DNA from: Penicillus capitatus
Taxonomy: Eukaryota > Plantae > Chlorophyta
Length of the DNA stretch: 64,000 bases
Direction of reading: 5' to 3'
Assembly (NCBI GenBank): GCA_965649825.1
Contig: OZ287707.1
Coordinates: 612,292-676,291, forward strand
Under the pieces are notes generated by a model. The model was not told the origin of the DNA, did no database searches, and worked only from the letters and a program-made list of their open reading frames with translations. The first letter of the stretch is position 1, and each line of letters opens with the position of its first letter. Positions 2-55,645 of the stretch are shown piece by piece. Both the position numbers and the translations under genes were made by a program.

Positions 2-1387
2 GAAAGAAAAAGGATCAAGGCTGCGCCATACGGTCCACATGTGGAGGAGAGAGAACGGACGATTTCGATCCCAGCAATCCCGCAGACTGAGTATCGAGAA
101 ACACACTACGTGAAGACACGTGCAGGCTATGCGCTCCCAATGTTCAAAACGGGGAAATTTCCCGAGTGGTACAAACCGTTGTTACCACCACAGGCGAAGC
201 CGGAGAAAAAGAAGCACCAAAAGAGATGTACATCAAAGAAGAAGAAAGGATGTGGAAGAAAGAAAGGCCCGAAGAAGCATGAGAAAGCTAAAACAGAGCC
301 AAGTCCACTACCAAGTTCAACTCTAACGGCGGAATCCAAAATAGAAACGACAACACTTCCAACAGTCGAGGTGCCGTCCGAGTCGCCCGAGATCGAGGTG
401 GAGCCGTCCGAGTCGCCCGAGATCGAGGTGGAGCCGTCCGAGTCGCCCGAGATCGAGGTGGAGCCGTCCGAGTCGCCCGAGATCGAGGTGGAGCCGTCCG
501 AGTCGCCCGAGATCGAGGTGGAGCCGTCCGAGTCGCCCGAGATCGAGGTGGAGCCGTCCGAGTCGCCCGAGATCGAGGTGGAGCCGTCCGAGTCGCCCGA
601 GATCGAGGTGGAGCCGTCCGAGTCGCCCGAGATCGAGGTGGAGCCGTCCGAGTCGCCCGAGATAGTGGTGGAGCCGTCCGAGTCGCCCGAGATAGTGGTG
701 GAGCCGTCCGAGTCGCCCGAGATAGTGGTGGAGCCGTCCGAGTCGCCCGAGATAGTGGTGGAGCCGTCCGAGTCGCCCGAGATAGTGGTGGAGCCGTCCG
801 AGTCGCCCGAGATAGTGGTGGAGCCGTCCGAGTCGCCCGAGATAGTGGTGGAGACGTCCGAGTCGCCGGCCACAAAGCCAGTCGTTCCTTCGCCGCGCGA
901 ACAGAAAAGAGAGAAACTTCATGCAGTGGCGGAGAAACAACGCCGCAGTGAAGTTCCACGGGTGATTCTCGAACCTCATGAACGTACAGTGTCGCTTCCT
1001 ATTATCAGCGAGCCATCTCAGATCTCACCCGAAAGAGAAAGCGACGAGCATGAATTGGACCACGACAATTACGATGGCCCCGATGGCGATCTGGATAAAG
1101 GGAAAGCCGAGACAGGATTGCACAATACACCAGTCATTGGAGACTTGGAGACACAACACCTTCACGATTTCCTCATCTTAAGATCCGGTTCAGCCGATCA
1201 GGCCGAACTCATCCCCCTTCAGATGAAAAGGCAGAGCAGAACTTCCAGACAAAACTCCGATTTCATACGCTTCGGTCGCTTTTCTCGGACAGGAGAGAAA
1301 ATGGGTGCCATGCAGGCGGCAACAGCAATGCGGTTCGATGGCCGTTCAGAAGTCGAGGCAGAAGAAGAAATCTCTGTTGCAGTCTAG
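2..1387 (+). CDS. Uncharacterised protein with an acidic Pro/Ser/Glu decapeptide tandem repeat; 5'-partial
   Basis: The frame is open from base 2 to TAG at 1385-1387. It has a Lys-rich segment followed by 16 EI(E/V)VEPSESP repeats. No recognisable domain. Confidence 0.6.
   Translation, partial: ERKRIKAAPYGPHVEERERTISIPAIPQTEYRETHYVKTRAGYALPMFKTGKFPEWYKPLLPPQAKPEKKKHQKRCTSKKKKGCGRKKGPKKHEKAKTEPSPLPSSTLTAESKIETTTLPTVEVPSESPEIEVEPSESPEIEVEPSESPEIEVEPSESPEIEVEPSESPEIEVEPSESPEIEVEPSESPEIEVEPSESPEIEVEPSESPEIEVEPSESPEIVVEPSESPEIVVEPSESPEIVVEPSESPEIVVEPSESPEIVVEPSESPEIVVEPSESPEIVVETSESPATKPVVPSPREQKREKLHAVAEKQRRSEVPRVILEPHERTVSLPIISEPSQISPERESDEHELDHDNYDGPDGDLDKGKAETGLHNTPVIGDLETQHLHDFLILRSGSADQAELIPLQMKRQSRTSRQNSDFIRFGRFSRTGEKMGAMQAATAMRFDGRSEVEAEEEISVAV
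368..866 (+). repeat. 30-bp coding tandem repeat, ~16.5 copies
   Basis: Nine units GAGATCGAGGTGGAGCCGTCCGAGTCGCCC, then seven units beginning GAGATAGTGGTG; no spacers. Confidence 0.97.
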
Positions 1388-2511: not shown

Positions 2512-4304
2512 TCATGTCACTTTGGTATACTTAACTTGCTGTGCTGTTAAGTCATCAGACGTGACCCCTGGTTCAGCTACTTTGTCGATAAAAGAAGTGT
2601 CTGAAAGGACTTCCGGGGACGGAGAACGCGATCGCATCCATGCGGGAATGTATGTCGAGATAACTTCAGAGACAGCTGGCACAATCTCCGGTAGAACTGA
2701 TGTGGCAACCTCGGCGACCTGTGATACTGTGGGCATCTCCGATCCTTCTGGGAGGACCTCGGGGAGCACAGATACGACTGCCTTAGTCGCATTCGACAGC
2801 GCGGATGCTTCGGATCCTTCTGGGAGGACTGATGTGACGGCCTCGGCGACTTGTGATACTGTGGGCATCTCCGATCCTTCTGGGAGGACCTCGGGGAGCA
2901 CAGATACAACTGCCTTAGTCGCATTCGACAGCGCGGATGCTTCGGATCCTTCTGGGAGGACTGATGTGACGGCCTCGGCGACTTGTGATACTGTGGGCAT
3001 CTCCGATCCTTCTGGGAGGACTGATGTGACGGCCTCGGCGACCTGTGACACAGTGGGAATCTCCGATCTTTCTGGAAGGATTGATGCGACAGCCTCGGCG
3101 ACTTGTGACAAAGGGGGCATTACTGGAATTACTTCAGGGAGGACTGACTTGACGACCTCAGTGACCGCCGACAGTGTGGGTCGTTCTGACAGTCCAGGAA
3201 ACTCTGGGTAAAGAGAGGCTATCCCCTGTTCCAGCCTCTCTTTTAGCTCTTCGTATTGAGGAATCTCTGACGCTGGTGGCAGCAACGATGGCAGCTCAGA
3301 CAAAAGAGGGATCAATGCTGGAAGCGCAGAGTACAACGGCTGCATATCAGACGGATCGGGAAGGGGGAAGTCGATCGGTGGCCACTCAAGGTCCTCTGTT
3401 TTTCCAAACGGCCAAAGACAAAAGCCATAAGTTCTACAGACCTTCTTAACAGATGTTGGATCATGCAGCGTTCCCATAACAACCTAGAGCCGCATAACCA
3501 TCAGTACGCAGGAATGACAATGCCCTTTACCTGAACAGATCTTCTGAACATGTCTCTGAAACAGTCATCAAAATCTCTGAAAATAGAGATGACTCTACAT
3601 AGACGTATTGTGCTCTTTATGATCTGATCCACGTAGAAGTGCTTCCAGACCTCTTCCATGAAACGCACCATTGCTTTCTGCATCACACCTCTTTCTCTCT
3701 GCATTCTTGACTGCATTTCGTAGATCTCTTGCCTGGCAGACATTGCAAAGCCTCCTCTGGACAAATCCAAAGTTTGCTTTGTTGTCCACGACGTTGCATA
3801 TCTGCACTGCACTGCAGAAATCATGACTGGTCATGTCTTTGTTGCGCATTCCCGCTGCCAGCAACAGATCTGCGGGATAAGGGGTGAATATTGCTTGTCT
3901 TTTTGGGGTCTACTTACGAAGATCGGCAGCAAACTTCAGGCAATCTTCTTGCTCATCGCCTGCGAAATGTCGACAGCCCTGTTGACATCCACACAGACCC
4001 CCGTCTTCTCTCCATGGATTTTTCTCTCGGAGCTTTACCTCTCGGACGACGGAACCGATGGAGACTGGTGCATAATCAGGCCTGTTTATTTCCAATTTCT
4101 TAGCATCCAAGATCGTCGTGCAGTAGGCACAGTATCGAGAGACGGCTAAAATAGAAGAGTGCCCCGTCAACTCCGGACATGGAGGACAACCCCAAATGGA
4201 CCTTGAACGTTCTCAACACGCTCGTTCCCAACCTCATACGCCTTTGCTTCGAAGAACGTGAAGGTCAGCACTAGACCGCAGAGGAGCACAGCTGTGTGTG
4301 TCAT
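2512..4304 (-). CDS. Secreted saposin-B-type (two-domain) protein with an acidic repeat tail; multi-exon
   Basis: Signal peptide MTHTAVLLCGLVLTFTFFEAKA (ATG at 4304). Spliced exons give saposin-like Cys patterns YCAYC...CQQGC...EDCLKF...DFCSAVQIC and LCNVCQ...KKVCRTYGFC. GT-AG introns at ~4148-4203, ~3869-3913 and ~3485-3530. Confidence 0.6.
2690..3170 (-). repeat. Coding repeats PEGSEMPTVSQVAEAVTSVL / PEGSEASALSNATKAVVSVLPEVL
   Basis: 60-bp and 72-bp units; a 132-bp higher-order unit occurs twice nearly identically. Confidence 0.9.
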
Positions 4305-6597: not shown

Positions 6598-6706
6598 ATG
6601 CATGACATAACTCAACCGCATGTTAAAGTTGTCGCCAAGATTTGCTCCGACGAAGTGATCGTCTTGTTCTGAGGAGTCATCTGTGTCAAAGGGCGCTGCC
6701 TGTCTT

Positions 6707-7212
6707 TGTCGCCGAGCGATGTGATATTGCCTTGTTCTGTGGGGGTCAGCTTGCGCAGGGGCGCTGCCTGTCTTGTCATCTGTGTGTCGGGACGATCTTC
6801 TCTGGTTCAGGTGGCGCGATGACTCACTCCTTCGTGGAGTCGCATCACCAGGGCCGTATAAAAGGAGGGGAATGGACGGACTTTTGCCTTACGATTTGTG
6901 TAAGACTTACCGTTTTCCTGCATCCTGGCGGATCATAACGCGGAGCACAACGTTCAACGCGCGCACATTCTCTACACGCCACTTTACCCTACCTTCGAAG
7001 ATCGTCTCAACCGGTTCCGTCAGGCAGAGGCCTCCGACTTGCAACAGCGAGGTGCAGAACGGGTCATCGACAACGCGGAAATCTGCCGTTCACAGCGAAG
7101 TTCAGAAGACGCCAGTGTCGACCTTATAGCGCCGCGCCCAGAAGACGTCCCTCCCCCGGACCATCAGACGCCTCTATGGTGACCAGGCCTCCGAGAATGG
7201 TTTTGGGCGACA
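6707..7212 (+). mobile_element. Type-A solo LTR (A1), 506 bp, nested in B2
   Basis: Ends TGTCGCC...GGCGACA; perfect TSD GTCTT (6702-6706, 7213-7217); TATAAAA at 6857-6863; internal conserved ORF. Confidence 0.9.
6925..7182 (+). pseudogene. LTR-encoded ORF copy A1 (putative CUG start; frameshift near the 3' end)
   Basis: LADHNAEHNVQRAHILYTPLYPTFEDRLNRFRQAEASDLQQRGAERVIDNAEICRSQRSSEDASVDL. An alternative frame PSDASMVTRPPRMVLGD aligns with A3 up to the LTR end. Confidence 0.7.
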
Positions 7213-7698
7213 GTCTTTTCAAATGGAATTAGGCTGCGTCTGGGGACATGGTTCTCTAGTTCTGACGCTCTGATGACTCGACTGCCTAGAAAGTCACGTC
7301 ATGATGCACATGATGAATGGGAAATTCGAACCGTTCTAGAGACCTTGCTCCGTGCACTTGTAAAGAAGTCTTCCGCTGTGAATCGCTTTCGTCCAACCCG
7401 ACCGGCGACAAAAGTGTCGAATTTGACTTCATTGCGAGTCAATTGTGTAATAATCCGATCGAAGCGACACCGAAGAATCGACGACATTATTTACCCTTCT
7501 CTTATCTCAGAACCCTCCCTCGCACTAGTTCTCGCCGGCGACTGTATTGGCTACGGTCTGTCTTCCCCAGCGAAATCCGACCATGCCTATTTCATCCTCC
7601 ACTGTTTATCCGCTAGTGTTCTTCTCCGGTGTCACAGCCTCGTGCTATAGAGCGATGAGAAACAGACGACGGCGAAGGCTTAAAGTTTATAAAAACTG

Positions 7699-8187
7699 TG
7701 TTACCATTTGCTGTTTCCTCCTGTTCTACCTCGATGGCTGTTTCGGACGGCCCAGTCGTTACCAGGTAGGTCCTCAGAGTGGACAACCACGAGCTCAACA
7801 CTTGCGTCTTCGGAATTTCTTTGCGAAGCGTAGATTTCTCCGTTGTCTATGTATAATACGCTCGGCACCCATTGGAGAAGGTCCGATTGTTCTCCCTGAC
7901 GGAAGCGGTTCAAACGCTCCTGAAAGGTAGGTAAAGTGGAGCGTAGTGAACGATCGCACGCGAGATGTCGTGCTCAGCGTCGTCGTTGGCCAGGGTGGCA
8001 ACGCCTCGGAGAAAAGAAGATAAAAATTAGCGGTCAAAATCTTACAAGGTTTCTTTCCTTTTCGCTTTCACAGAACTACTGAATGCTTCAACGTCCCACC
8101 TTTGTACCGGCCCGACGACATGACTTCCTAGGCAGATGAGTCAGCACGTAAGCAGAGCCAGAGAAGAGCGCCCCCTTCACAGAACGG
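7699..8187 (-). mobile_element. Type-A LTR (A2), 5'-truncated; ORF frameshifted
   Basis: Promoter block TGACTCATCTGCCTAGGAAGTCATGTC, GCCACC-CTG-G at 7993, fragments LANDDAEHDISRAIVHYAPLY / NRFRQGEQSDLLQ / DNGEIYASQRNSEDASVELVV, and 3' end GGTAACA. No TSD. Confidence 0.75.
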
Positions 8188-8457
8188 TGTCGCCGGTCGG
8201 GTCGGACGCAAACCGTAAAACAGCGGAAGACTTTACACGTACTCGGAGCAAGGTTCAGAAAGGTCGAGATTGTCCATTATATACTCGCGTGGTGACAATA
8301 CGTTCCTAAGCATATGAGTCAACCTGTACGCAGAGCCAGGTGAAAGGGCCCTTTCACAGAAAAGAAGCCCTTCTGTTGTGACAATAAGCGTCCTTCCCAC
8401 CAAATGACTCACACAGAACAAGGCAGTCAGTCACATCGCCATGACGAATCCCACACA
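8188..8457 (-). mobile_element. Type-B LTR (B3), 270 bp
   Basis: 3' end CCGACCGGCGACA, AAGTCTTCCG motif, TATATAA and the promoter block. The 5' end is diverged and no TSD is recognisable; it directly abuts A2. Confidence 0.75.
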
Positions 8458-8551
8458 GATTCCAAACAGATTCCGGAATCTTCCAAGAACATTCCACTTT
8501 GTTACTAAAAATAGACCCGCGGCCTTGATGCGACATCTCCAAACCCTACCC

Positions 8552-8558
8552 TATAAAA
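8552..8558 (+). promoter_or_regulatory. TATA box upstream of the orphan ORF
   Basis: CCCTATAAAAGCG about 130 nt upstream of the ATG at 8690. Confidence 0.45.
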
Positions 8559-8689
8559 GCGTTGTAGAAGTACAGTTTTCGTCTCTCTTTGTGTTAAGGT
8601 TCTTTTTGCCTTTCAAAAGTTTCGCACTCATACGATTCGAATCACAAACCACCGAACAATCTACTCGACTGTAGTCTGTTTACCACTAG

Positions 8690-9589
8690 ATGACACACAG
8701 CGCGATTTTCCGTAACGTCCTTGGACGGAAAAAAATCAAACGCCACATACTTGACTCTTTTATGAATCGGTTGCAAAATGAACACTGGATAGCTTACAAC
8801 ACGTTGCTCTATGGAAAAAAAGCGCACCGACCCTTCACGGATTGCAAGTCGACAGTGCGATTTTTTTCCGTGTTTTGTCGAATATTTCAGTGGTATGATA
8901 AGGACCCTGTAGCGGAAGAGTTCATATACTATACGAACCAGCAAGGGAGGCGGGTACCTCGTACGTGGGCGGATTTTTTAGACGTGCTCTATGTCGCGGT
9001 CCAGGAAGAAGGGTTCTCACTGAATCTCGAGGAGTCGTTTGCCTACCTTGCTCATGCTGTACTCTGCGTAGCTTGCATGGACGGCGAGGGTTTGTCAATG
9101 TTTGTGTTTTCGCTTGATAGATACAACGTGGCCAATTGGTTCATACGCATCTTCTTTGCTGCGTTAGAAACCTCCCTTCCACCTTCGTTAGTAAATAATG
9201 TGCCAGATCGGGAACCGCAGCCGCGGGCGGAGACGTTGGGCGAGGGGAGCGGGGAACCGCAGCCGCGGGCGGAGACGTTGGGCGAGGGGAGCGGGGAACC
9301 GCAGCCGCGGGCGGAGACGTTGGGCGAGGGGAGCGGGGAACCGCAGCCGCGGGCGGAGACGTTGGGCGAGGGGAGCGGGGAACCGCAGCCGCGGACGGTT
9401 CGTGGGGTCAAAAGGTACCGTTTGCGTAAAACGTATGAGAGGGAGATGGCAAGACGCAGGAGGGTCGGACATCTATACGGTCTAAGGTCTACTCCGGCAA
9501 GAGATAAGAGTTTATCTACAATGGAGGAAGAAAATAAACAGGGACATGCCGAATGTTCTTCGCGTTCTCGGAAGAGGTCGAGGACATAG
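8690..9589 (+). CDS. Intronless orphan protein (299 aa) with a 14-aa repeat and a basic C-terminus
   Basis: Uninterrupted ATG-TAG ORF: globular-looking N-terminal ~170 aa, EPQPRAETLGEGSG x4, and an Arg/Lys-rich tail. Family not recognised. Confidence 0.55.
   Translation: MTHSAIFRNVLGRKKIKRHILDSFMNRLQNEHWIAYNTLLYGKKAHRPFTDCKSTVRFFSVFCRIFQWYDKDPVAEEFIYYTNQQGRRVPRTWADFLDVLYVAVQEEGFSLNLEESFAYLAHAVLCVACMDGEGLSMFVFSLDRYNVANWFIRIFFAALETSLPPSLVNNVPDREPQPRAETLGEGSGEPQPRAETLGEGSGEPQPRAETLGEGSGEPQPRAETLGEGSGEPQPRTVRGVKRYRLRKTYEREMARRRRVGHLYGLRSTPARDKSLSTMEEENKQGHAECSSRSRKRSRT
9212..9394 (+). repeat. 42-bp coding tandem repeat (4 units plus a partial)
   Basis: GAACCGCAGCCGCGGGCGGAGACGTTGGGCGAGGGGAGCGGG repeated identically. 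Confidence 0.97.
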
Positions 9590-10041
9590 TGGAAAATCAT
9601 GATGAAATGAAGCAGTGAGTCGGGTAAGGATGCGTTCGAGGTTGTTTTGAACTCGAATTCGTTGTCACGGGCCCATTGTCGAGGTGAGCGGAACTAAGGA
9701 GAAGCGGATGGTAACGGGGACTTGCCAACTTTGAGCGATTTAGCGACCTAACTCGTTATTTGGTGGCGGATTCTTCACACTTCCACATTCCTTGGCGACG
9801 TGCGGCGCATGACAGTCCACCACATCGCCATGTCCCAGGTCTCCGGAGTCGTCGCACCAGACTAGAGATCGATCGCTGTCGTGGTTCACCGCGTTTTCAC
9901 CGTGTTTTTGTTTGTTTTTGTGTGTTTGCGTAGGCGTCGTGGATTTTTCTTTTTCGCACAGCGAACCTTTTTCTCGTGGGTGTTCTAGGACTGCTGATCT
10001 TTTTCTTCGCCCTTGCGGGATGCTGCTATTCGAAACGTCCA

Positions 10042-10316
10042 TGTCGCCAAGATTCTCCTTGTCGATGTGACTGTCTTGTTGGACAACGGCCAGGTGGTGT
10101 CAAGGGCGCTGACTGTCTTGTCATATTAGCTCATTAGAGGCCAAAGGGCTTTTTTATGGTATAGGCAGCAGCTTTCTGACTCACCTGCCCATGAACGTCA
10201 TGTCACTGCGCGCATATATAATAATAATAGACAAGTTGCATGTTCGCACACCTTTTCTGAACGCTCGTAAAGAAGTCTTCCGCTTGAATCGTTTTCGTTC
10301 GACGCGACCGGCGACA
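10042..10316 (+). mobile_element. Type-B solo LTR (B4), 275 bp
   Basis: Ends TGTCGCC...GGCGACA; TSD GTCCA/GTCCT (4 of 5); TGACTCACCTGCC block, TATATAA and AAGTCTTCCG. Confidence 0.85.
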
Positions 10317-11132
10317 GTCCTGCAAAAAAATGTAGCTCAAAAACTGCAGTTTTGTAACCACCGGAAGTGGTAGAGCCGTAGCATAACCACCCAGGTGTAA
10401 AACCTCGTCTTGGGCCCATGACGGAGCAGACACTATTCGACGCCCCAGAACGAACACGTTACAATCAGTATCGTAAGAACGAACACAGAAAAATCAACAC
10501 AGATCGATCCGACTGTTCGGCTTCCCTCCTTTATTGTTTTGCCGACAATTGAGTTTTACACCAGGCGCGCCGACCATCGGTCGCGACCGATGACGGCTTT
10601 CAAGCTAACTTCCCCATAACGCTAGGGATGTGGTTGGTAAACATGAGCTGAAGTTCACAGATTGATAGGTGAAAAAGTTAGGAAATCCATAACCACTTTG
10701 GGTATTTAAGGCCGACATCCACTTTGTAATAACTCGTGTTCGTATCCAAGTGAATCTGATCGCGTTTGTGACATATTAACACGCGAAGAATCGACTTATA
10801 TTGAAACACATCGTTACATCGATTCCCAATAGATAGGCAAGCGGGTTATGCTCATATATCATCCAGAGGTGCAATACGGAGCAATCGGAGGAGAACGCTA
10901 GAACTCAGATGCTTGTAGGACGGGTAGGCGGGCACTCTGGAGTCGAAATTGAACAAGGGCGTGGAGGAAGGCGAGATCGGGAGGAAGGAGACCAGCGAGT
11001 CCAATGGCTGCCGTGGTGAGAACGGTTTTGTACAAACCAAAATTAAGACGAGAGATGTATGACGGTGGATACGGAAGATGTGTATTTTTCAGGACGCCTT
11101 GACAACTGAAGGAGCCCAGGCAACTAACTAAC

Positions 11133-11799
11133 TGTTGCCGGTGACTGATGGGGATGCGTCGGACATTGCGCGCCGCGTGCGCGCGAACGCGTACAGGCGA
11201 AGCGGAGGAACAAGATTGAGCAAATGCAGATGCTACCGCATGGTGCGGCCTGTCACATAAATACCCCTGGCCCACGCGGACTCCTGTCACGTCAGGAAGC
11301 GGACAGCCTGTCCGGTCTGCGGGGCCAGAACCGTTCTCGCGTACCCGTCAGTGACATTATCCAGAAGGGCCCAGAAAGGGGGGGAGGTAGGTCACAACGC
11401 AACATGAGGAATGACACCATCATAACGTCATGCATGACGCCATCAAAGAGGCCAAATAAAGGGGGTTGTGTAGGTTTTATGTCTTTTGTAAGAAATCTTT
11501 GTTTGGGTTCACCCTGGCTGATAACGGCGCACACAATATTCGACGGGCGACTATCCATTACGCTCCGCTTTACCCCTCGTTTGAAGACCGACTTAACCGC
11601 TTCCGGCAAGGGGAATCTTCGGATCTCCGTCAACGTGGTGCAGAACAAGTCGTTGACAATGCGGAAATCTACGGCTCTCAGCAGAGCTCGGAGGACGCAA
11701 GTGTTGAGTTGGTGGTAGCTTCACCTGAAGACCTGATTTCTCCCGGGCCCCCAGACGCCATCATCGACATGAGACCCACTATCAGAACGTTCGGTGACA
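11133..11799 (+). mobile_element. Type-A solo LTR (A3), 667 bp
   Basis: Ends TGTTGCC...GGTGACA; perfect TSD CTAAC (11128-11132, 11800-11804); intact internal ORF. Confidence 0.88.
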
Positions 11800-11852
11800 C
11801 TAACTGCGTTATACAAGAGGAGGGGCACGCACGCAGCACAGGATTTGACTAA
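11514..11852 (+). CDS. LTR-encoded ORF copy A3 (putative CUG start; reads out of the LTR)
   Basis: TTCACC-CTG-G start; LADNGAHNIRRATIHYAPLYPSFEDRLNRFRQGESSDLRQRGAEQVVDNAEIYGSQQSSEDASVEL...TFGD| crosses the LTR end at 11799 and stops in the flank. Confidence 0.65.
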   Translation: MADNGAHNIRRATIHYAPLYPSFEDRLNRFRQGESSDLRQRGAEQVVDNAEIYGSQQSSEDASVELVVASPEDLISPGPPDAIIDMRPTIRTFGDTNCVIQEEGHARSTGFD

Positions 11853-11998
11853 GGTACGCACGAACAACCGAAGCCGGACCAAAGTGAGGCCGGGCAAGCT
11901 AGTCGATAATGTGGGAGACCTTTAAGAGCTTTGGACGTGACAACGGACAAATGATGAGAAAACGTAGCCAAAGATCAAACCATGCACCAAGGTACTAC

Positions 11999-12300
11999 TG
12001 TCACGATTGTCATCATGATGAAGAGCTGAAGGATGATGGTCCAAGAAATGCCTCATCATCATAAGAGGCACTGATGGCCAACAGCTATTAATGGCCACGT
12101 CAAATCAAACCCAACACTATAAAAGGAAGATTATTGTCACATTAATCATCTTTTGTAAGAAACCCTGTTGCGTCTTCCACAGCCACGTACTTATCCATAT
12201 CAGTACTTAAAGGAAGAGATTCCTTGAGCTGGAAACTGCCCAATGAAAGCAAAGAAGCCTGTTATGGGCCACAAAAACGGGTAAAGCAGGTGTATTGACA
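11999..12300 (+). mobile_element. Additional LTR-like remnant
   Basis: Starts TGTCACG; CTATAAAAGG at 12117-12126 is followed by TTTTGTAAGA and GTCTTCC, as in the A and B LTRs. No TSD found; boundaries approximate. Confidence 0.4.
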
Positions 12301-12476
12301 TTCGGAAGAAGTAAGAAGGAAAAAGTGACTGGAAGCCCAATTCGCGACCAAACAAATGGACTGTTGCATTTCCGCTTGTAAATGATTGTTAGAGAAAGTG
12401 TCACAGGGTTAGCTTCGCTGTCGTATTATCTGGACAGCTGTCCCCCTTCTGGGTCACATCAACACCTAGATACTTA

Positions 12477-13038
12477 TGTCGCCTGGCGATGGGACTAATG
12501 TCTTGTTGTCGTGGGGTTCCACGCGGTGGGGGGACGCTGGTTGAGTCATCTGAGGCGCTTTTCTTTGGTTCTGGCGCTAGGATGACTCACCTGCCTAGGA
12601 AAGTCACATCACCAGAACCGGATAAGAGGTGGAGGACGGCTTGAGTTTTGCCTTTCTGTTGTTCCTTGTAAGACATTCGACTTTGACGTGTGGCCACTCT
12701 GGCAGACGACGACGTTGAGCGAAGCATCACGCGCGCTTACGTGCCTTACGCACCTCTGTACCATACGTTCCAGGAAAGCCTTAACCGGTTTCGACAAGGA
12801 GAACGCTTAGGGCTTCTCCAACGGGGTGCTGAGCGAATTGTTCATAACGTAGGTCTCTACGACACACGAAGGAGCTCTGAAGACGGCGTTGCCGACATTC
12901 CCATATTTCTTGAGGAATTGGTGACCCCTGGTCCTGTCGAGACACATCTAGAAGGAGAGGGTGAGCAAAGCGCCCCATCAAACGACGACGTAGAAGCGCC
13001 TTCTGAAGCAAGAGAGAATCTTCCCCCGAACGGCGACA
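12477..13038 (+). mobile_element. Type-A solo LTR (A4), 562 bp
   Basis: Ends TGTCGCC...GGCGACA; perfect TSD ACTTA (12472-12476, 13039-13043). Confidence 0.9.
12559..12629 (+). promoter_or_regulatory. Shared LTR U3 promoter block (clearest copy)
   Basis: TTTTCTTTGGTTCTG-N9-TGACTCACCTGCCTAGGAAAGTCACATCA followed by a TATA-like GATAAGAGG. Homologous blocks are at ~6452, 6798, 7252, 8115-8167 (-), 8280-8350 (-), 10150 and 13570-13630 (-). Confidence 0.7.
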
Positions 13039-13079
13039 ACTTATACGCGCCCTTGTATGGAACTCTGTCTCGTTTGTAA
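12699..13079 (+). CDS. LTR-encoded ORF copy A4 (putative CUG start; reads out of the LTR)
   Basis: GCCACT-CTG-G start with in-frame TGA at 12684; LADDDVERSITRAYVPYAPLYHTFQESLNRFRQGERLGLLQRGAERIVHN...PNGD| crosses the LTR end at 13038. Confidence 0.65.
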   Translation: MADDDVERSITRAYVPYAPLYHTFQESLNRFRQGERLGLLQRGAERIVHNVGLYDTRRSSEDGVADIPIFLEELVTPGPVETHLEGEGEQSAPSNDDVEAPSEARENLPPNGDNLYAPLYGTLSRL

Positions 13080-13099
13080 TCCATCTCCGTGTTTGTGAC

Positions 13100-13355
13100 A
13101 TCCTACCTCGACGGAAAGAAACACACAGTTTCGTGTTTACGTTTTATGTGCGTTGCTGTGAGATTCGCTCGGAAAGTTGAAGCAGTGCGCGTTCGCGGTT
13201 TGCTGTTTTTTATAGAATAATTGCTTTTACAGCTCCTTTTTGGGAAGATCAGGAGTGCATCTGTATCTAAGTGTAGCTGTGACGGTGCGCCCGCCATCGC
13301 CTCGGGTCTTCTGGCTAAGGACGCTGCCGTCGGGACAACCGTCCCTGTGGCGACA
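13100..13355 (-). mobile_element. Partial LTR-like remnant
   Basis: On the minus strand it starts TGTCGCC and contains GGCGATGG and CTATAAAAA. No matching TSD. Confidence 0.4.
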
Positions 13356-13467
13356 CGCCAGCGGAGGATCACTGGAAAAACGTGACGAGAGGCGTGAGAA
13401 GACACTTACGTAATGATGTGACGTACCTTTCTCTGGGGTACTTAACGCGAGAACTGTTTGCTGTACT

Positions 13468-13739
13468 TGTCGGCGATCGGGCCGGACAAAGATTAACAGC
13501 GGAAGACTTGTTACAGACTGTTTTCAGAGCAAGGTGAAACAGGTGCGGATTGTACCTTCAAATACCCCCGTTGTGACATGACATGCCCAGGCAGGTGACT
13601 CAGCACTGCTCCAGAACCATAGAAAAAGGCCCCTTTCCGGCCCGAAACCTTCACTGACAAGACCCCGAGTGTCCCAGACCAAGGTGCCCCCCCCTCCTCC
13701 ACAAGACAGTCACATCAGCACATCGCCATCTTGCCGACA
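13468..13739 (-). mobile_element. Type-B solo LTR (B5), 272 bp
   Basis: Ends TGTCGGC...GCCGACA; perfect TSD GTACT (13463-13467, 13740-13744); promoter block and AAGTCTTCCG present. Confidence 0.9.
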
Positions 13740-13908
13740 GTACTCGTCCACAGTTATGTAAATAACCATTGCTGACGAGTCCTCTTACGCGGTTCACCAT
13801 CCGGTTCGGACTCGGCCGACAGGTCGACGTTCACAGTAGCAATCAATGTTCGAGAGACAGAGACCGGGAATGACTAACAGGAAAGAGGAAATGAAATGAA
13901 ATAGGCAA

Positions 13909-50632: not shown

Positions 50633-52597
50633 TTAATTGAGAACGGGAGTTCTCATACGACGGATGAATCGTGAAAAGGCCTGCCAATTATCAAACATCA
50701 GGCCGCCCATTCTCAAAAACGTAACTTGCTGGAGACTGCACGACACTGCTTTCTCTCCAAACACGCTTTCTGTAATCCTCGAAAATGCATACTCATCATA
50801 CCTAGACATCCACAGACAGATATAATACATACAGCATCCCTGATGCGTGCACGTGCATACCTTTGAAGGGCGTTTTCGCCTGAAAGTGGAATGTTTGCAC
50901 GCCTGGCACCGGCAATGACCTGTTTCAAGAGGCCCTGTGGGGAGCACATGGATTCTGGTGGATGTTCACAGTCACGCATTTCCACACAGGTAAAGCTCAG
51001 CAGTGCATTGTGCCTCTGGACAACATCCATGATGGGCGCATATCCATCCCGTGTCTCGGTATTGTAATACCCAGCCGTTAGTTCTGCTGCATGCGAACGT
51101 GTCTTAAACCACCAATGCACACCGGCCAGTTTTACGCCCAACGGCACACTGGCGACAAAGTGATGCGTTGAACTGCCGTCATGGTTTTTCTTTGTGGATT
51201 TTAATGTCCTTGGCCGTCCAGTCTTGTTCAAAACTTGATGGATCGCTGTCAGAATTCTATCAGCATGTTGGATCAACATGCTACTGTACCACTGCAGAAA
51301 GAACTGGCCATAGCGCGAGTCAAATGTTCCGCAATGGCAATTGAAGAATCCCGTCTCCCATGACTTTGAATTATAGCAACCGGCGTCGTGTGGCCCACCG
51401 AAACCCCTGAAAATGATCGCCTCAGCTTCAAGGCAGATGCCAAAGCACGGCAACAGACGTACCATTCTTCGTGACCCGCCACCAATGCTGCCCTTCGGAG
51501 AGATGCAAGCATGTAGGAGTCGTAGCACTGAAACTCCCCCACTCCCGGAAACGTCCACCGTCCATCTCCCTCTGGATAGGCCGGATAACGCAGTTCTCCA
51601 GCTGGACCTAATCCAACTGTTATTTCGGTAATGACATCCCCGAACATAGACTGAAATTCATTTGCAAAAGCATCAACAAAATCTCTATAGATATCAACGG
51701 GTGTCCGGCCATGGAAAATGGGCTCTTCGTCGCAGCCCAATGAAAGGTACTCCTCGTTGCGATGTCCCTGTTTGTCTGTATAGAATATATCTGGGTTTTC
51801 ATAACCGATATCTAAAACCCATTTAGGAAGAGGAATCTCACAAGTGTCTCCTACATTGCTACCAGCGGCGTGGAAGGACATGACCGCCTGCAGCTTCAGA
51901 TCAGCTTCGCTTATCATCTGAAATAGCTTTCTGTAAGCTGAAAAGTCATAAATTTTGGGACCGTCGCGTTCAGCAATGCCCCACCAGATATCTACCATCA
52001 CTCCATGCACGCCCGTACGCTTAAAACGGTCCAGGGCTTGACGCAGTTCTTTCTCCTTCAACAACTGTGATTCTGCCTTACCCTGTTTCTCAATCACCGT
52101 CACCGTATCCAATGGCAACATGACATAGACAGGACATCCCGTCGACTCTGGCTGCTTCCAGGGTGCCTCATACCCCAGTCGACGAGGACGCAGCAATCGA
52201 GTGGCATTGCTTTGTAATGAAGGGGCTCCGTTGTTTAACGTTTCTTGCAACCTATAGCATGAATGCATAGGGACATGGTTGGTTCAATTTTGCTAAGAGA
52301 TTACGGATGGATGTCGATGGTCGATTGAAGAATCTTTGTATCGTTCCCGAATGGATCTTGTGCAATGACCGTAGCTCTCATTGTTGTGTGAGGAATCTTC
52401 TCGCGCATAGGCATAGGCGATGTCAAACGCACCGTCTTGCCATTTTGGCATCGCAAGCGTGACGGCCCCCGACTCTGAGCACACACCGCAGCGTCTTTAC
52501 GTAGCACTTGAATCGCAGCGCACTCGACCTGCTCAGGTCGACAGTATTTAGCGTGGATGACTGAAGTGCCTCGCGTCACTAAATGAAAAGAAGGCAT
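50633..52597 (-). CDS. Beta-amylase (GH14), paralog 1
   Basis: PVYVMLPLD, GVMVDIWWG, FHAAGSNVGD, GLGPAGELRYP (catalytic Glu), VKLAGVHWW and SGENAL (catalytic Glu). Confidence 0.95.
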
Positions 52598-53891: not shown

Positions 53892-55645
53892 ATGCAGGCA
53901 AGATGTTGTGTGAAGAGCAGTCGGTCCTTTACGAGACGTCGACCGCTTAGAAGACTTAGACCTCGCGTCTACATTGAACGCGCCGAAGCAGACGTGTCAA
54001 GAATGGAACGTATTCGAGCGCCGCCTCACTCTCCTGCCCGTGTTAAGTATCGTCGAGGCAGCCCAACCAATGCCGACCATGTTGAGATCAACAGGCACAT
54101 CACAGCACACGGCAGAGTGAATGGTCCGATGATGTGTGTGTGCCATGCAGATTGTTGCATCAGAGTTTTGAGGAAGTGACGTTTCCCGCTTCAGAGGATG
54201 AGGAATGGGAACCCTCCGCTCGAAACTCTTGTGTTCCGCTACGGCCATCGACTGGTGGTTGTCCTGTTTTTGTCATGTTGCCGTTGGATACTGTATGGAT
54301 AACAACAGAACAAGACAAGTCGTTGTCATTCTTGAGAAAGGAGAAAGCTCTGGAATTGGCGCTGCAGACCTTTAAGCGAGCTGGAGTAGAGGGTGTTATG
54401 GTGGACATCTGGTGGGGTATTGTCGAGCGCAATGGCCCACGTGACTATGATTTTACGGCATATAAGCGTCTGTTTCGGATGATTTCTGATGCTGGGTTGA
54501 AGATCCAGGCTGTTTTGAGTTTTCACGCAGCTGGCAGTAATGTGGGAGATACCTGTAAGATCCCATTGCCTCAGTGGCTGCTGAGTATAGGAGAAGAGAA
54601 TCCGGATATTTTCTACACAGATAAAAACCGATTCCGCAACAAGGAGTGTCTGTCGCTGGGTTGCGATGAGGAGCCAATATTTCACGGCCGTACTGCCGTT
54701 GGAATTTATAAGGAGTTCTCTTCTGCTTTTGTGAATACATTTAGAGGACTGGTGGGAACAGTGATCACTGAAATCACTGTGGGATTGGGACCTGCGGGTG
54801 AACTGCGTTATCCCTCATACCCAGAAGGCGATGGAAGATGGAGGTTCCCAGGTGTGGGCGAATTTCAATGCTATGACAGATATATGTTGAAAAGTTTGAG
54901 TGAAGCTGCTGAACGTATTGGACATCCAGAATGGGGAAGAGGAGGTCCCCATGATGCTGGACACTATAACGCATATGCGTGGGATACAGGCTTCTTCAAA
55001 CACTGGGGCAGATTTCAGAGTGAATACGGCGAATTCTTTCTAAGCTGGTACAGCGATCGACTCATCGAACACGCAGAAAGAGTTCTAGGTGCCATATCTG
55101 AAGTCCTTGGAAAAGCTGGCGAGCGAAAGGCATCGCGATCCATAAGTCGTCCTTATGGAGGCTGCTGGATGCACGAATTCGAATCTGCCTGTCACCTGGG
55201 AGTGAAGTTGGCTGGTGTGCACTGGTGGTTCAACACAAACAGCCATGCTGCGGAATTGACTGCTGGATATTACAACACTCGATTTAGGAATGGATATGAT
55301 AAGATCATTGAGAGTCTGAAGCGCTTTGACGTGCATGTGAGTTTTACTTGTGTGGAGATGCGTGACTGTGATCACCCACCAGAAGCTGCCTGTTCCCCTC
55401 AAAGACTTCTGGCTCAGATCATCGACAGCTGCCACCGCCACAGAGTGCATCTAACTGGAGAGAACGCTCTGCAGAGATATGATCGTTATGCATTTGGACG
55501 AATACTGGAGAGTGCTTTTGGGGAGAACTCAAGAGCAGGCACGCTTGATCAAATCACCTTTCTCAGAATGGCAGATCGTATGTTTGATAACTGGGGAAGC
55601 TTCCAAACATTCTTGGATCAGATGAAGGGCACGCATTTGATGTGA
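53892..55645 (+). CDS. Beta-amylase (GH14), paralog 2
   Basis: Same GH14 motifs, both catalytic Glu present; Arg-rich first exon joined by one intron. Confidence 0.95.

What the first reader, a model, noticed from the sequence alone, without database searches (positions are those of the whole stretch)
6919..12702. Invariant CUG in Kozak-like context as the apparent start of the LTR ORF
Seen: conservation begins abruptly at TGCATC-CTG-GCG (6925), GCCACC-CTG-GCC (7993 minus), TTCACC-CTG-GCT (11514) and GCCACT-CTG-GCA (12699). All four have A at -3 and G at +4. The Leu codon never varies while the next Ala codon uses all four wobble bases. Each copy has an in-frame stop within ~18 codons upstream and no in-frame AUG, and upstream spacer lengths are not conserved modulo 3. 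Known: CUG initiation produces MLV glyco-Gag. Inference: programmed non-AUG initiation, perhaps keeping this product low while scanning ribosomes reach a downstream AUG.
Basis: partly seen in the sequence, partly recalled or inferred. Interest (0 to 1): 0.8.

Follow-up and report, generated by a model that had tools for sequence, protein, structure and literature searches.

The report
CUG start of LTR-encoded Gag domain
Four decaying retrotransposon LTRs in a protist genome carry the first ~100 codons of the element's Gag-like polyprotein, and this coding region has no AUG and begins at a CTG that stays fixed across the family, so it most likely starts translation at a non-AUG codon as some retroviruses do.

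Summary
The four repeats are LTRs of one retrotransposon family. c1 and c4 are solo LTRs with TG..CA ends and 5-bp target duplications.

The "LTR ORF" is not a separate gene. It is the N-terminal ~96-114 codons of the element's Gag-like/protease polyprotein. It stays open to the last LTR base and continues through the primer-binding site.

- **Start codon.** In 14 DNA-verified independent copies (down to ~45% protein identity), the first conserved codon is CTG in 14/14. Three other invariant Leu columns use 3-6 synonymous codons.
- **Context.** A at -3 (14/14), C at -4 (13/14), G at +4 (14/14).
- **Coding signal.** Median dN/dS is about 0.16 and synonymous sites are saturated.
- **ATG depletion.** Sense-strand ATG is about tenfold rarer from the TATA-like box to the LTR end than in U3 or on the antisense strand.
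- **Next AUG.** In a young element it lies 384 nt downstream and in frame. In two full-length proteins the first in-frame Met lies over the primer-binding site.

Best reading: initiation at CUG, with leaky scanning to a junction AUG. This resembles glyco-Gag, PEG10 and RTBV. It is a new variant of a known mechanism and is inferred from sequence only.

The parts
6707..7212 (+). c1: solo LTR (506 bp), ends TGTCGCC...GGCGACA, 5-bp target-site duplication GTCTT at 6702-6706 and 7213-7217
6925..7212 (+). c1: LTR-borne 5' part of the polyprotein ORF, starting at CTG 6925-6927. Broken by one frameshift that gives a premature stop.
7699..8187 (-). c2: LTR remnant. The 3' end GGTAACA lies at 7699. The 5' edge is unclear or cut where another LTR-like terminus starts at 8188.
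7699..7993 (-). c2: LTR-borne ORF part, starting at CTG 7993-7991. Broken by at least three frame-breaking indels.
11309..11800 (+). c3: LTR. The 3' end ...GGTGACA is at 11800. The 5' edge is uncertain and no target duplication was found.
11514..11800 (+). c3: LTR-borne ORF part from CTG 11514-11516, open to the last LTR base (287 nt)
12477..13038 (+). c4: solo LTR (562 bp), ends TGTCGCC...GGCGACA, target-site duplication ACTTA at 12472-12476 and 13039-13043
12699..13038 (+). c4: LTR-borne ORF part from CTG 12699-12701, open to the last LTR base (340 nt, 1 mod 3). It runs on into flanking DNA.
6857..6865 (+). c1 TATA-like box, 68 nt upstream of the CTG. Equivalent boxes: 11455-11462 (c3), 12621-12629 (c4), 8098-8106 minus strand (c2, weak).
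6899..6904 (+). c1 TGTAAG motif in the leader. Equivalents: 11487-11492 (c3), 12667-12672 (c4), 8041-8046 minus strand (c2). Function unknown.
12583..12606 (+). c4 U3 promoter-like module TGACTCA..CCTAGGAAAGTCA. Equivalents: from 6820 in c1 and 8121-8143 minus strand in c2.

Best explanation
The four repeats are LTRs of one family of LTR retrotransposons in an unnamed protist. U3 carries the promoter. The transcript probably starts near the TGTAAG motif, leaving a leader of roughly 20-50 nt that usually has no AUG.

The first conserved codon is a CUG with A at -3 and G at +4. I infer that it is the initiation codon of the Gag-like/protease polyprotein. The first ~96-114 codons of that protein lie in R/U5 of the LTR. 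The ORF runs through the last LTR base and the primer-binding site into the internal region.

CUG is a weak start, so many scanning ribosomes would pass it. The following ~290-385 nt are almost free of AUG in all three frames. Ribosomes would therefore reach the next AUG, which is in frame. In many copies it would be formed by the terminal A of the LTR plus the TG of an abutting primer-binding site. This AUG sits just before a hydrophobic segment.

The predicted result is two N-terminal isoforms: a long form with the LTR-encoded domain and a short form that starts at the hydrophobic segment.

Shown: LTR identity, coding constraint, codon and context invariance, ATG depletion, and the in-frame next AUG. 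Inferred: the transcription start site, actual initiation at the CUG, leaky scanning, and the two isoforms.
For: **LTR identity.**
- L004 carries two 100% identical 614-bp repeats with TGTCGG..CCGACA ends and a GGAAG duplication. A PBS-like TGGTTTCGGAGC and an integrase ORF lie between them.
- c1 and c4 are solo LTRs with 7/7 terminal inverted repeats and 5-bp duplications.

**The ORF is the polyprotein N-terminus.**
- In L004 it reads through the LTR end and the PBS, giving 209 aa.
- P0168 (724 aa) and P0170 (670 aa) have the domain at residues ~4-105. It is followed by hydrophobic segments, coiled coils, CX2CX4HX4C knuckles and an aspartic protease.
- L004 ORF1 aligns with P0168 residues 3-180, E = 6e-26.

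**It is coding.** Median dN/dS is 0.16, with median pS 0.74.

**Start site.**
- CTG 14/14, -3 A 14/14, -4 C 13/14, +4 G 14/14.
- The Ala codon varies: GCA 3, GCC 7, GCT 3, GCG 1.
- Other invariant Leu columns use 3-6 codons.
- The leader has no ATG in 10 of 14 copies, and the upstream frame and spacer lengths are not conserved.

**ATG depletion.**
- In the first 240 nt of 13 copies there is 1 out-of-frame ATG, against ~17 expected from codon shuffles or synonymous resampling.
- ATG density is 0.16 per 100 nt from TATA to LTR end, 1.73 in U3, and 1.36 for antisense CAT.

**Next AUG.**
- In L004 it lies 384 nt after the CTG and in frame.
- P0168 and P0170 read Met-Val-Ser-Glu over the PBS.
- The CTG-to-LTR-end length is 1 mod 3 in c4, L002, L005, L011 and L012.

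**Precedents.** MLV glyco-gag CUG (PMC3042739), PEG10 CUG (PMC2800197), RTBV AUU start with an AUG-free stretch (PMC5902531), and the Ty1 PBS inside GAG (PMC4974528).
Against: - There are no transcript, ribosome or protein data. The transcription start is unknown.
- The conserved C-A at -4/-3 also fits an initiator-type element.
- No conserved RNA structure lies downstream of the CUG.
- One copy (L003) has an in-frame ATG two codons upstream.
- One predicted protein (P0171) starts with ATG, GTG or TTG at the site itself. One (P0183) has Arg there.
- DNA for the two full-length proteins could not be read, so their first codons are unknown.
- The 14 copies are related, so counts overstate independence.
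Confidence: 0.65

Rival explanations
1. The conserved C-A at -4/-3 is an initiator element and marks the transcription start (the U3/R boundary). TGTAAG would act as a box about 30 nt upstream. The abrupt onset of conservation would then be the start of the RNA, not a translational context. The CUG would lie only 3 nt from the cap.
For: Columns -6 to -1 fit an initiator-like pattern: non-A, non-A, C, A, non-A, and T or A in 8/14. TGTAAG lies 23-33 nt upstream of that A in most copies.
Against: This does not explain the invariance of all three CTG bases. The spacing from TGTAAG ranges from 26 to 53 nt. A better TATA-like box lies 59-113 nt upstream. The domain is under protein-level selection and so must be translated. 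That would be hard from a CUG 3 nt from the cap.
Confidence: 0.12
2. Translation starts at assorted near-cognate codons (GTG, TTG, ACG, ATC) a few codons upstream that differ from copy to copy. The CTG would then be just an internal Leu codon.
For: Most copies have some in-frame near-cognate codon 1-7 codons upstream. Examples are GTG three codons up in c4, L001 and L011, and GTG five codons up in L004 and L008.
Against: None of these codons is conserved in position, and c2 has none. An internal Leu codon should drift as the other Leu columns do. Position -4 is invariant although it would be a third codon position beside variable first and second positions. That pattern is not typical of coding constraint.
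Confidence: 0.08
3. Active master elements start with ATG at or next to this site. The CTG copies would be dead descendants.
For: L003 reads ATG ACA CTG. P0171 begins with a called start exactly at the site.
Against: The youngest element seen, L004, has 100% identical LTRs and an intact target duplication, and it has CTG and no ATG for 384 nt. CTG occurs in all subfamilies down to ~45% identity. P0169, from the same subfamily as L003, has no Met there.
Confidence: 0.06
4. An AUG is supplied by cis- or trans-splicing of an upstream exon onto the ORF.
For: The only conserved AG in the leader lies in TGTAAG and is preceded by a pyrimidine run. The host's best named topoisomerase II hits by local identity include dinoflagellates, a group that trans-splices.
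Against: The distance from that AG to the CTG is not conserved modulo 3. Some copies have in-frame stops in between. No AG lies next to the CTG. No conserved ATG lies between the TATA-like box and TGTAAG.
Confidence: 0.04
5. The LTR segment is not translated. Its conservation would reflect RNA or DNA functions such as packaging or strand transfer, and the real start would be the junction AUG.
For: ATG depletion alone would also fit a long untranslated leader.
Against: dN/dS is about 0.16 with saturated synonymous sites. The frame is open to the last LTR base with conserved phase. No conserved RNA structure was found.
Confidence: 0.03

Closest known systems
Glycosylated Gag (glyco-gag, gPr80) of murine leukemia virus
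   Same: A longer Gag form is made from the same unspliced RNA, from an in-frame CUG upstream of the Gag AUG. It adds a unique N-terminal domain (PMC3042739).
   Different: Here the extension is ~96-114 codons encoded inside the LTR (R/U5), upstream of the primer-binding site. It is the most conserved part of the protein. The hydrophobic segment lies after the AUG rather than in the extension. No sequence similarity was detected, with no Pfam or PDB hit. The host is a protist.
PEG10, a Ty3/gypsy-derived mammalian gene
   Same: A Gag-like ORF of retrotransposon origin is initiated at an in-frame CUG upstream of an AUG, and both starts are used (PMC2800197).
   Different: PEG10 is a domesticated single-copy gene with a 34-codon extension. 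Here the CUG belongs to a multi-copy mobile family, lies in the LTR and has no experimental support.
Rice tungro bacilliform virus ORF I (AUU start) with leaky scanning
   Same: A non-AUG first start codon is followed by a long stretch without AUG, which lets ribosomes reach downstream starts (PMC5902531).
   Different: RTBV reaches its AUU by ribosome shunting over a long structured leader with short uORFs, and its downstream starts open separate ORFs. Here the leader is short and free of uORFs, and the next AUG is in the same frame.
Ty1 GAG of Saccharomyces cerevisiae
   Same: GAG starts upstream of the primer-binding site, so the PBS lies inside the GAG ORF (PMC4974528).
   Different: I know of no non-AUG GAG start in Ty1 (from memory, not checked in a paper). 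Here about 100 codons lie in the LTR and no AUG is present.

Membership tests
LTR retrotransposon long terminal repeat | TG...CA termini forming a short inverted repeat | tested here: met
   c1 and c4 have TGTCGCC...GGCGACA (7/7). L004 has TGTCGG...CCGACA.
LTR retrotransposon long terminal repeat | Target-site duplication of 4-6 bp flanking the LTR or the element | tested here: met
   GTCTT for c1, ACTTA for c4, GGAAG for the L004 element. Five further loci also show one. Not found for c2 or c3.
LTR retrotransposon long terminal repeat | Two direct copies flanking an internal region with a primer-binding site after the 5' LTR, a purine-rich tract before the 3' LTR, and retroelement genes | tested here: met
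   In L004, identical LTRs flank TGGTTTCGGAGC, a purine-rich tract and an rve integrase ORF. The element is internally deleted. The primer tRNA was not identified.
Ty3/gypsy-type (Metaviridae-like) element | Gene order gag-protease-reverse transcriptase-RNase H-integrase | tested here: inconclusive
   P0168 and P0170 show knuckle plus protease, and L004 shows integrase. No reverse transcriptase was seen joined to an A-type LTR.
CUG-initiated N-terminally extended Gag (glyco-Gag type) | In-frame CUG upstream of the first AUG with no stop in between | tested here: met
   L004 has its CTG at 8220 and its first ATG 384 nt later in frame. P0168 and P0170 are open from the domain to the Met over the PBS.
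CUG-initiated N-terminally extended Gag (glyco-Gag type) | Favourable start context (purine at -3, G at +4) | tested here: met
   A at -3 in 14/14 and G at +4 in 14/14. A rough context from 33 putative host start codons gives purine at -3 in 72% and G at +4 in 39%.
CUG-initiated N-terminally extended Gag (glyco-Gag type) | Protein shown to start at the CUG | not testable with these tools
   No RNA, ribosome or protein data are available.
CUG-initiated N-terminally extended Gag (glyco-Gag type) | Homology of the extension to the gammaretroviral one | tested here: not met
   No Pfam hit on family members or the full-length proteins. A profile of 25 family members finds nothing in the PDB sequences. 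The AlphaFold2 model is poor, with pLDDT 61. It works like this system but is not a member.
RTBV-type leaky scanning | AUG depletion in all frames between the first start and the next | tested here: met
   1 out-of-frame ATG against ~17 expected. Density is 0.16 versus 1.73 per 100 nt.
RTBV-type leaky scanning | Long structured leader with short uORFs and ribosome shunt | tested here: not met
   The leader from the TATA-like box is 59-113 nt. ATG is absent in 10/14 copies.
Ty1-type gag start inside the 5' LTR | ORF open across the LTR end and the primer-binding site | tested here: met
Ty1-type gag start inside the 5' LTR | AUG start codon | tested here: not met
   There is no in-frame ATG before the LTR end in 13 of 14 copies.

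The most novel reading that the evidence does not exclude
A protist LTR-retrotransposon lineage has independently evolved a glyco-Gag-like dual-start system in which the two starts are built into the element's replication signals. A fixed CUG in R/U5 opens a conserved, mostly disordered ~100-residue cytosolic domain. The second start is an AUG created by the LTR's terminal CA abutting the TGG of the primer-binding site, directly before a membrane-spanning segment. The same RNA would then yield a membrane-anchored long Gag-like protein and a short form led by a signal-like segment. The ratio would be set by CUG leakiness across an AUG-free LTR.
Probability: 0.3. Interest if true: 0.65.

Novelty: new variant of a known kind. 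Interest (0 to 1): 0.5.

Why it matters
Non-AUG starts of retroelement Gag proteins are documented for a gammaretrovirus and for one domesticated gene. Here a whole mobile family appears to depend on a CUG for its best-conserved protein domain, and that domain is encoded in the LTR itself.

If this is right, three things follow:
- Dual-start Gag expression is older or more often reinvented than thought.
- It gives a clean sequence signature for finding such starts in unannotated genomes: a fixed near-cognate codon, fixed -3/+4 context and an AUG-free stretch.
- Standard gene callers mis-start or miss these ORFs. The database proteins of this family all carry artificial bacterial-type starts.

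Tried and rejected
- **TGTAAG as a poly(A) signal.** TGTAA is not enriched downstream of 88 long host ORFs (1.16-fold). Rejected.
- **TGTAAG as a splice acceptor or donor supplying an AUG.** The frame to the CTG is not conserved, some copies have stops in between, and two copies lack the GT. Its role remains unexplained.
- **A conserved hairpin downstream of the CUG.** RNAalifold found no pairs in -5 to +80 of 14 copies.
- **Rfam and tRNA scans of the window.** No hits.
- **Relatives in IMG/VR and JGI metagenomes.** None. The family was seen only in two ENA assemblies plus the window's own contig.
- **Naming the host.** Exact look-ups gave no names. The best named topoisomerase II hits are only 36-42% identical.
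- **Fold of the N-terminal domain.** The AlphaFold2 model is too poor for a fold search (pLDDT 61, pTM 0.25).
- **L010 (P0019).** It looked like an exception with TTG, but its upstream sequence is unrelated because the copy is 5'-truncated. It is uninformative.
- **L009.** The reverse transcriptase and integrase downstream of its A-type LTR belong to a separate young element with 108-bp LTRs inserted there.

Full report
**What is in the window.** The window is eukaryotic and about 50% G+C. It carries topoisomerase II, an armadillo-repeat gene, an RRM/zinc-knuckle gene and two GH14 beta-amylase genes. Between 6.7 and 13.1 kb lie four copies of a repeat with a conserved reading frame: c1 from 6925 (+), c2 from 7993 (-), c3 from 11514 (+) and c4 from 12699 (+). 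No further copy is in the window.

**The repeats are LTRs.** A profile of the three open copies found 36 short proteins, almost all from ENA assemblies. Their initial M residues are artefacts of a bacterial-type gene caller. In the loci I read, the called starts are GTG or TTG.

Locus L004 carries two 100% identical 614-bp copies with these features:
- ends TGTCGG...CCGACA
- a 5-bp target duplication, GGAAG
- a primer-binding-site-like TGGTTTCGGAGC two bases after the 5' copy
- a purine-rich tract before the 3' copy
- an integrase-core ORF in between

In the window, c1 (6707-7212) and c4 (12477-13038) have 7/7 terminal inverted repeats (TGTCGCC...GGCGACA). Their 5-bp duplications are GTCTT and ACTTA, so both are solo LTRs. 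The similarity of c4 to L001 stops at the terminal ...GGCGACA. c2 and c3 have recognisable 3' ends at 7699 and 11800 but unclear 5' edges.

As for breaks, c1 has one frameshift and c2 has at least three frame-breaking indels. c3 and c4 are open to the last LTR base.

**What the ORF is.** In the 5' LTR of L004 the frame runs through the LTR end and the PBS into the internal region, giving 209 aa. An exhaustive profile search found 54 family proteins. Two are long: P0168 (724 aa) and P0170 (670 aa). They have the LTR-encoded domain at residues ~4-105. Then, in order, come:
- Met-Val-Ser-Glu-Arg, which is the PBS read in frame
- a hydrophobic segment
- coiled coils
- a second hydrophobic segment
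- CX2CX4HX4C knuckles
- an aspartic protease

L004 ORF1 aligns with P0168 residues 3-180 at E = 6e-26. The L004 element is therefore an internally deleted copy. The "LTR ORF" is the N-terminal domain of the element's Gag-like/protease polyprotein. The variable C-termini of the short database proteins are simply flanking DNA. The arrangement recalls Ty1, whose PBS lies inside GAG (PMC4974528).

**It is under protein-level selection.** Over 73 aligned codons and 91 pairs, median pN is 0.26 and median pS is 0.74. Median dN/dS among the 46 unsaturated pairs is 0.16. Synonymous sites are saturated between the window's own copies.

**The CTG.** I read 14 independent copies with an alignable 5' region: the four in the window plus L001, L002, L003, L004, L005, L007, L008, L009, L011 and L012. 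They go down to about 45% protein identity.

| Column | Count |
|---|---|
| +1 to +3 (C, T, G) | 14/14 each |
| +4 G, +5 C | 14/14 |
| +6 | C 7, A 3, T 3, G 1 |
| -3 A | 14/14 |
| -4 C | 13/14 |
| -5 pyrimidine | 13/14 |
| -15 to -6 | no base above 8/14; A about 9% |

The three other invariant Leu columns use 6, 3 and 3 codons. None of 13 other conserved columns of fourfold or higher degeneracy is limited to one codon. The codon is therefore constrained as nucleotides, not only as leucine. Position -4 would be a third codon position beside variable first and second positions, which is not how coding constraint looks. The upstream frame and spacer lengths are not conserved, and in-frame stops lie 5-19 codons upstream in the window's copies.

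**AUG avoidance.**
- The stretch from the TATA-like box to the CTG (59-113 nt) has no ATG in 10 of 14 copies.
- The first 240 nt of the ORF in 13 copies hold 1 in-frame and 1 out-of-frame ATG. About 17 out-of-frame ATGs are expected from codon shuffles, and about as many from synonymous resampling of the same proteins.
- In eight LTRs with mapped ends, ATG density is 1.73 per 100 nt in U3 and 0.16 from the TATA-like box to the LTR end. Antisense CAT in that stretch is 1.36.
- In L004 the first ATG in any frame lies 384 nt after the CTG and is in frame.
- In P0168 and P0170 the first in-frame Met lies on the PBS.
- The CTG-to-LTR-end length is 1 mod 3 in c4, L002, L005, L011 and L012, although lengths range from 289 to 343 nt. 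The terminal A of the LTR plus the TG of an abutting PBS would therefore give an in-frame ATG. L004 and L008 have a 2-nt spacer, and L004 reads CTG there.

**Interpretation.** The domain must be translated, has no AUG, and begins at the only positionally conserved near-cognate codon, in a -3 A/+4 G context. The AUG-free stretch and the in-frame next AUG fit leaky scanning, with two N-terminal isoforms as the outcome. Known parallels are:
- the CUG-initiated glyco-gag of murine leukemia virus (PMC3042739)
- the CUG start of PEG10 (PMC2800197)
- the AUU start plus AUG-free ORFs of rice tungro bacilliform virus (PMC5902531)

No homology to any of these was found. The AlphaFold2 model of the domain is poor and mostly unstructured apart from one helix.

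**Caveats and rivals.** No expression data exist. The C-A at -4/-3 also fits an initiator pattern, with TGTAAG about 30 nt upstream. If transcripts start there, the scanning model fails, although that would not explain the fixed CTG. No conserved hairpin follows the CUG.

There are exceptions. L003 has ATG ACA CTG. P0171 starts with a called ATG, GTG or TTG exactly at the site. P0183 has Arg there. At protein level, 45 of 49 members that cover the site read Leu-Ala. Splicing-in of an AUG is unlikely, because the frame from the only conserved AG is not kept and some copies have stops in between.

**Host and distribution.** The host could not be named. The best named topoisomerase II hits are 36-42% identical, and dinoflagellates are among the best by local identity. 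Relatives of the family were not found in IMG/VR or JGI metagenomes. A sister LTR type (B) shares the LTR termini but places its gag-pol ATG after the PBS. The coding U5 therefore looks like a derived feature of this family.

**Verdict.** It is a new variant of a known mechanism. Interest is moderate at 0.5.

Noticed in passing
window 6600-13900: The region is a nest of LTR pieces. Besides the four A-type LTRs there are B-type fragments: a + strand piece ending at 7410 with a promoter module near 7270, a terminus at 8188, 10264-10316, 10353-10832, and a minus-strand piece at about 13400-13740. These are related to the LTR in front of a capsid/RT/integrase gag-pol in L004, whose ATG lies after the PBS.
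   Followed up: partly
window 6899-6904, 8041-8046 (-), 11487-11492, 12667-12672: A TGTAAG motif preceded by a pyrimidine run lies 26-53 nt upstream of the CTG and is conserved in 12 of 14 copies. It could be a start-site element, an upstream box or a splice site. TGTAA is not enriched 3' of host ORFs.
   Followed up: partly
L009 11025-16004: A young 4980-bp LTR element with only 108-bp identical LTRs. It has the same PBS (TGGTTTCGGAGC) and a short target duplication, and encodes gag-protease and RT-integrase ORFs. It is inserted downstream of a decayed A-type 5' LTR.
   Followed up: partly
L004 7944-10353: A recently inserted, internally deleted A-type element about 2.4 kb long. It has identical LTRs, the first ~200 codons of the polyprotein and an integrase-core ORF, but no protease or reverse transcriptase. 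It is presumably non-autonomous.
   Followed up: partly
P0168 and P0170 (no DNA held): The Gag-like polyprotein has two strongly hydrophobic, membrane-span-like segments and long coiled coils upstream of the zinc knuckles. No capsid domain was recognisable in Pfam. This is unusual for a Gag.
   Followed up: no
window 250-969; 2687-3082; 9168-9419: Three tandem repeats: a 30-bp unit inside ORF 41-1387, a 132-bp unit in three copies, and a 42-bp unit in about six copies inside ORF 8690-9589, which has no Pfam hit.
   Followed up: no
window 50713-52268 (-) and 54134-55645 (+): Two GH14 beta-amylase genes lie in inverted orientation, with 75% complementary inverted repeats between them.
   Followed up: no
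window 12080-12200: A promoter-only LTR fragment with a TATAAAAGG box and TGTAAG but no CTG-ORF, just upstream of c4.
   Followed up: no
all family proteins in the public protein collection: Their N-termini are artefacts of a bacterial-type gene caller. GTG or TTG was called as Met, and reading started in U3 or the leader. Any annotation built on them will mis-place the start.
   Followed up: yes
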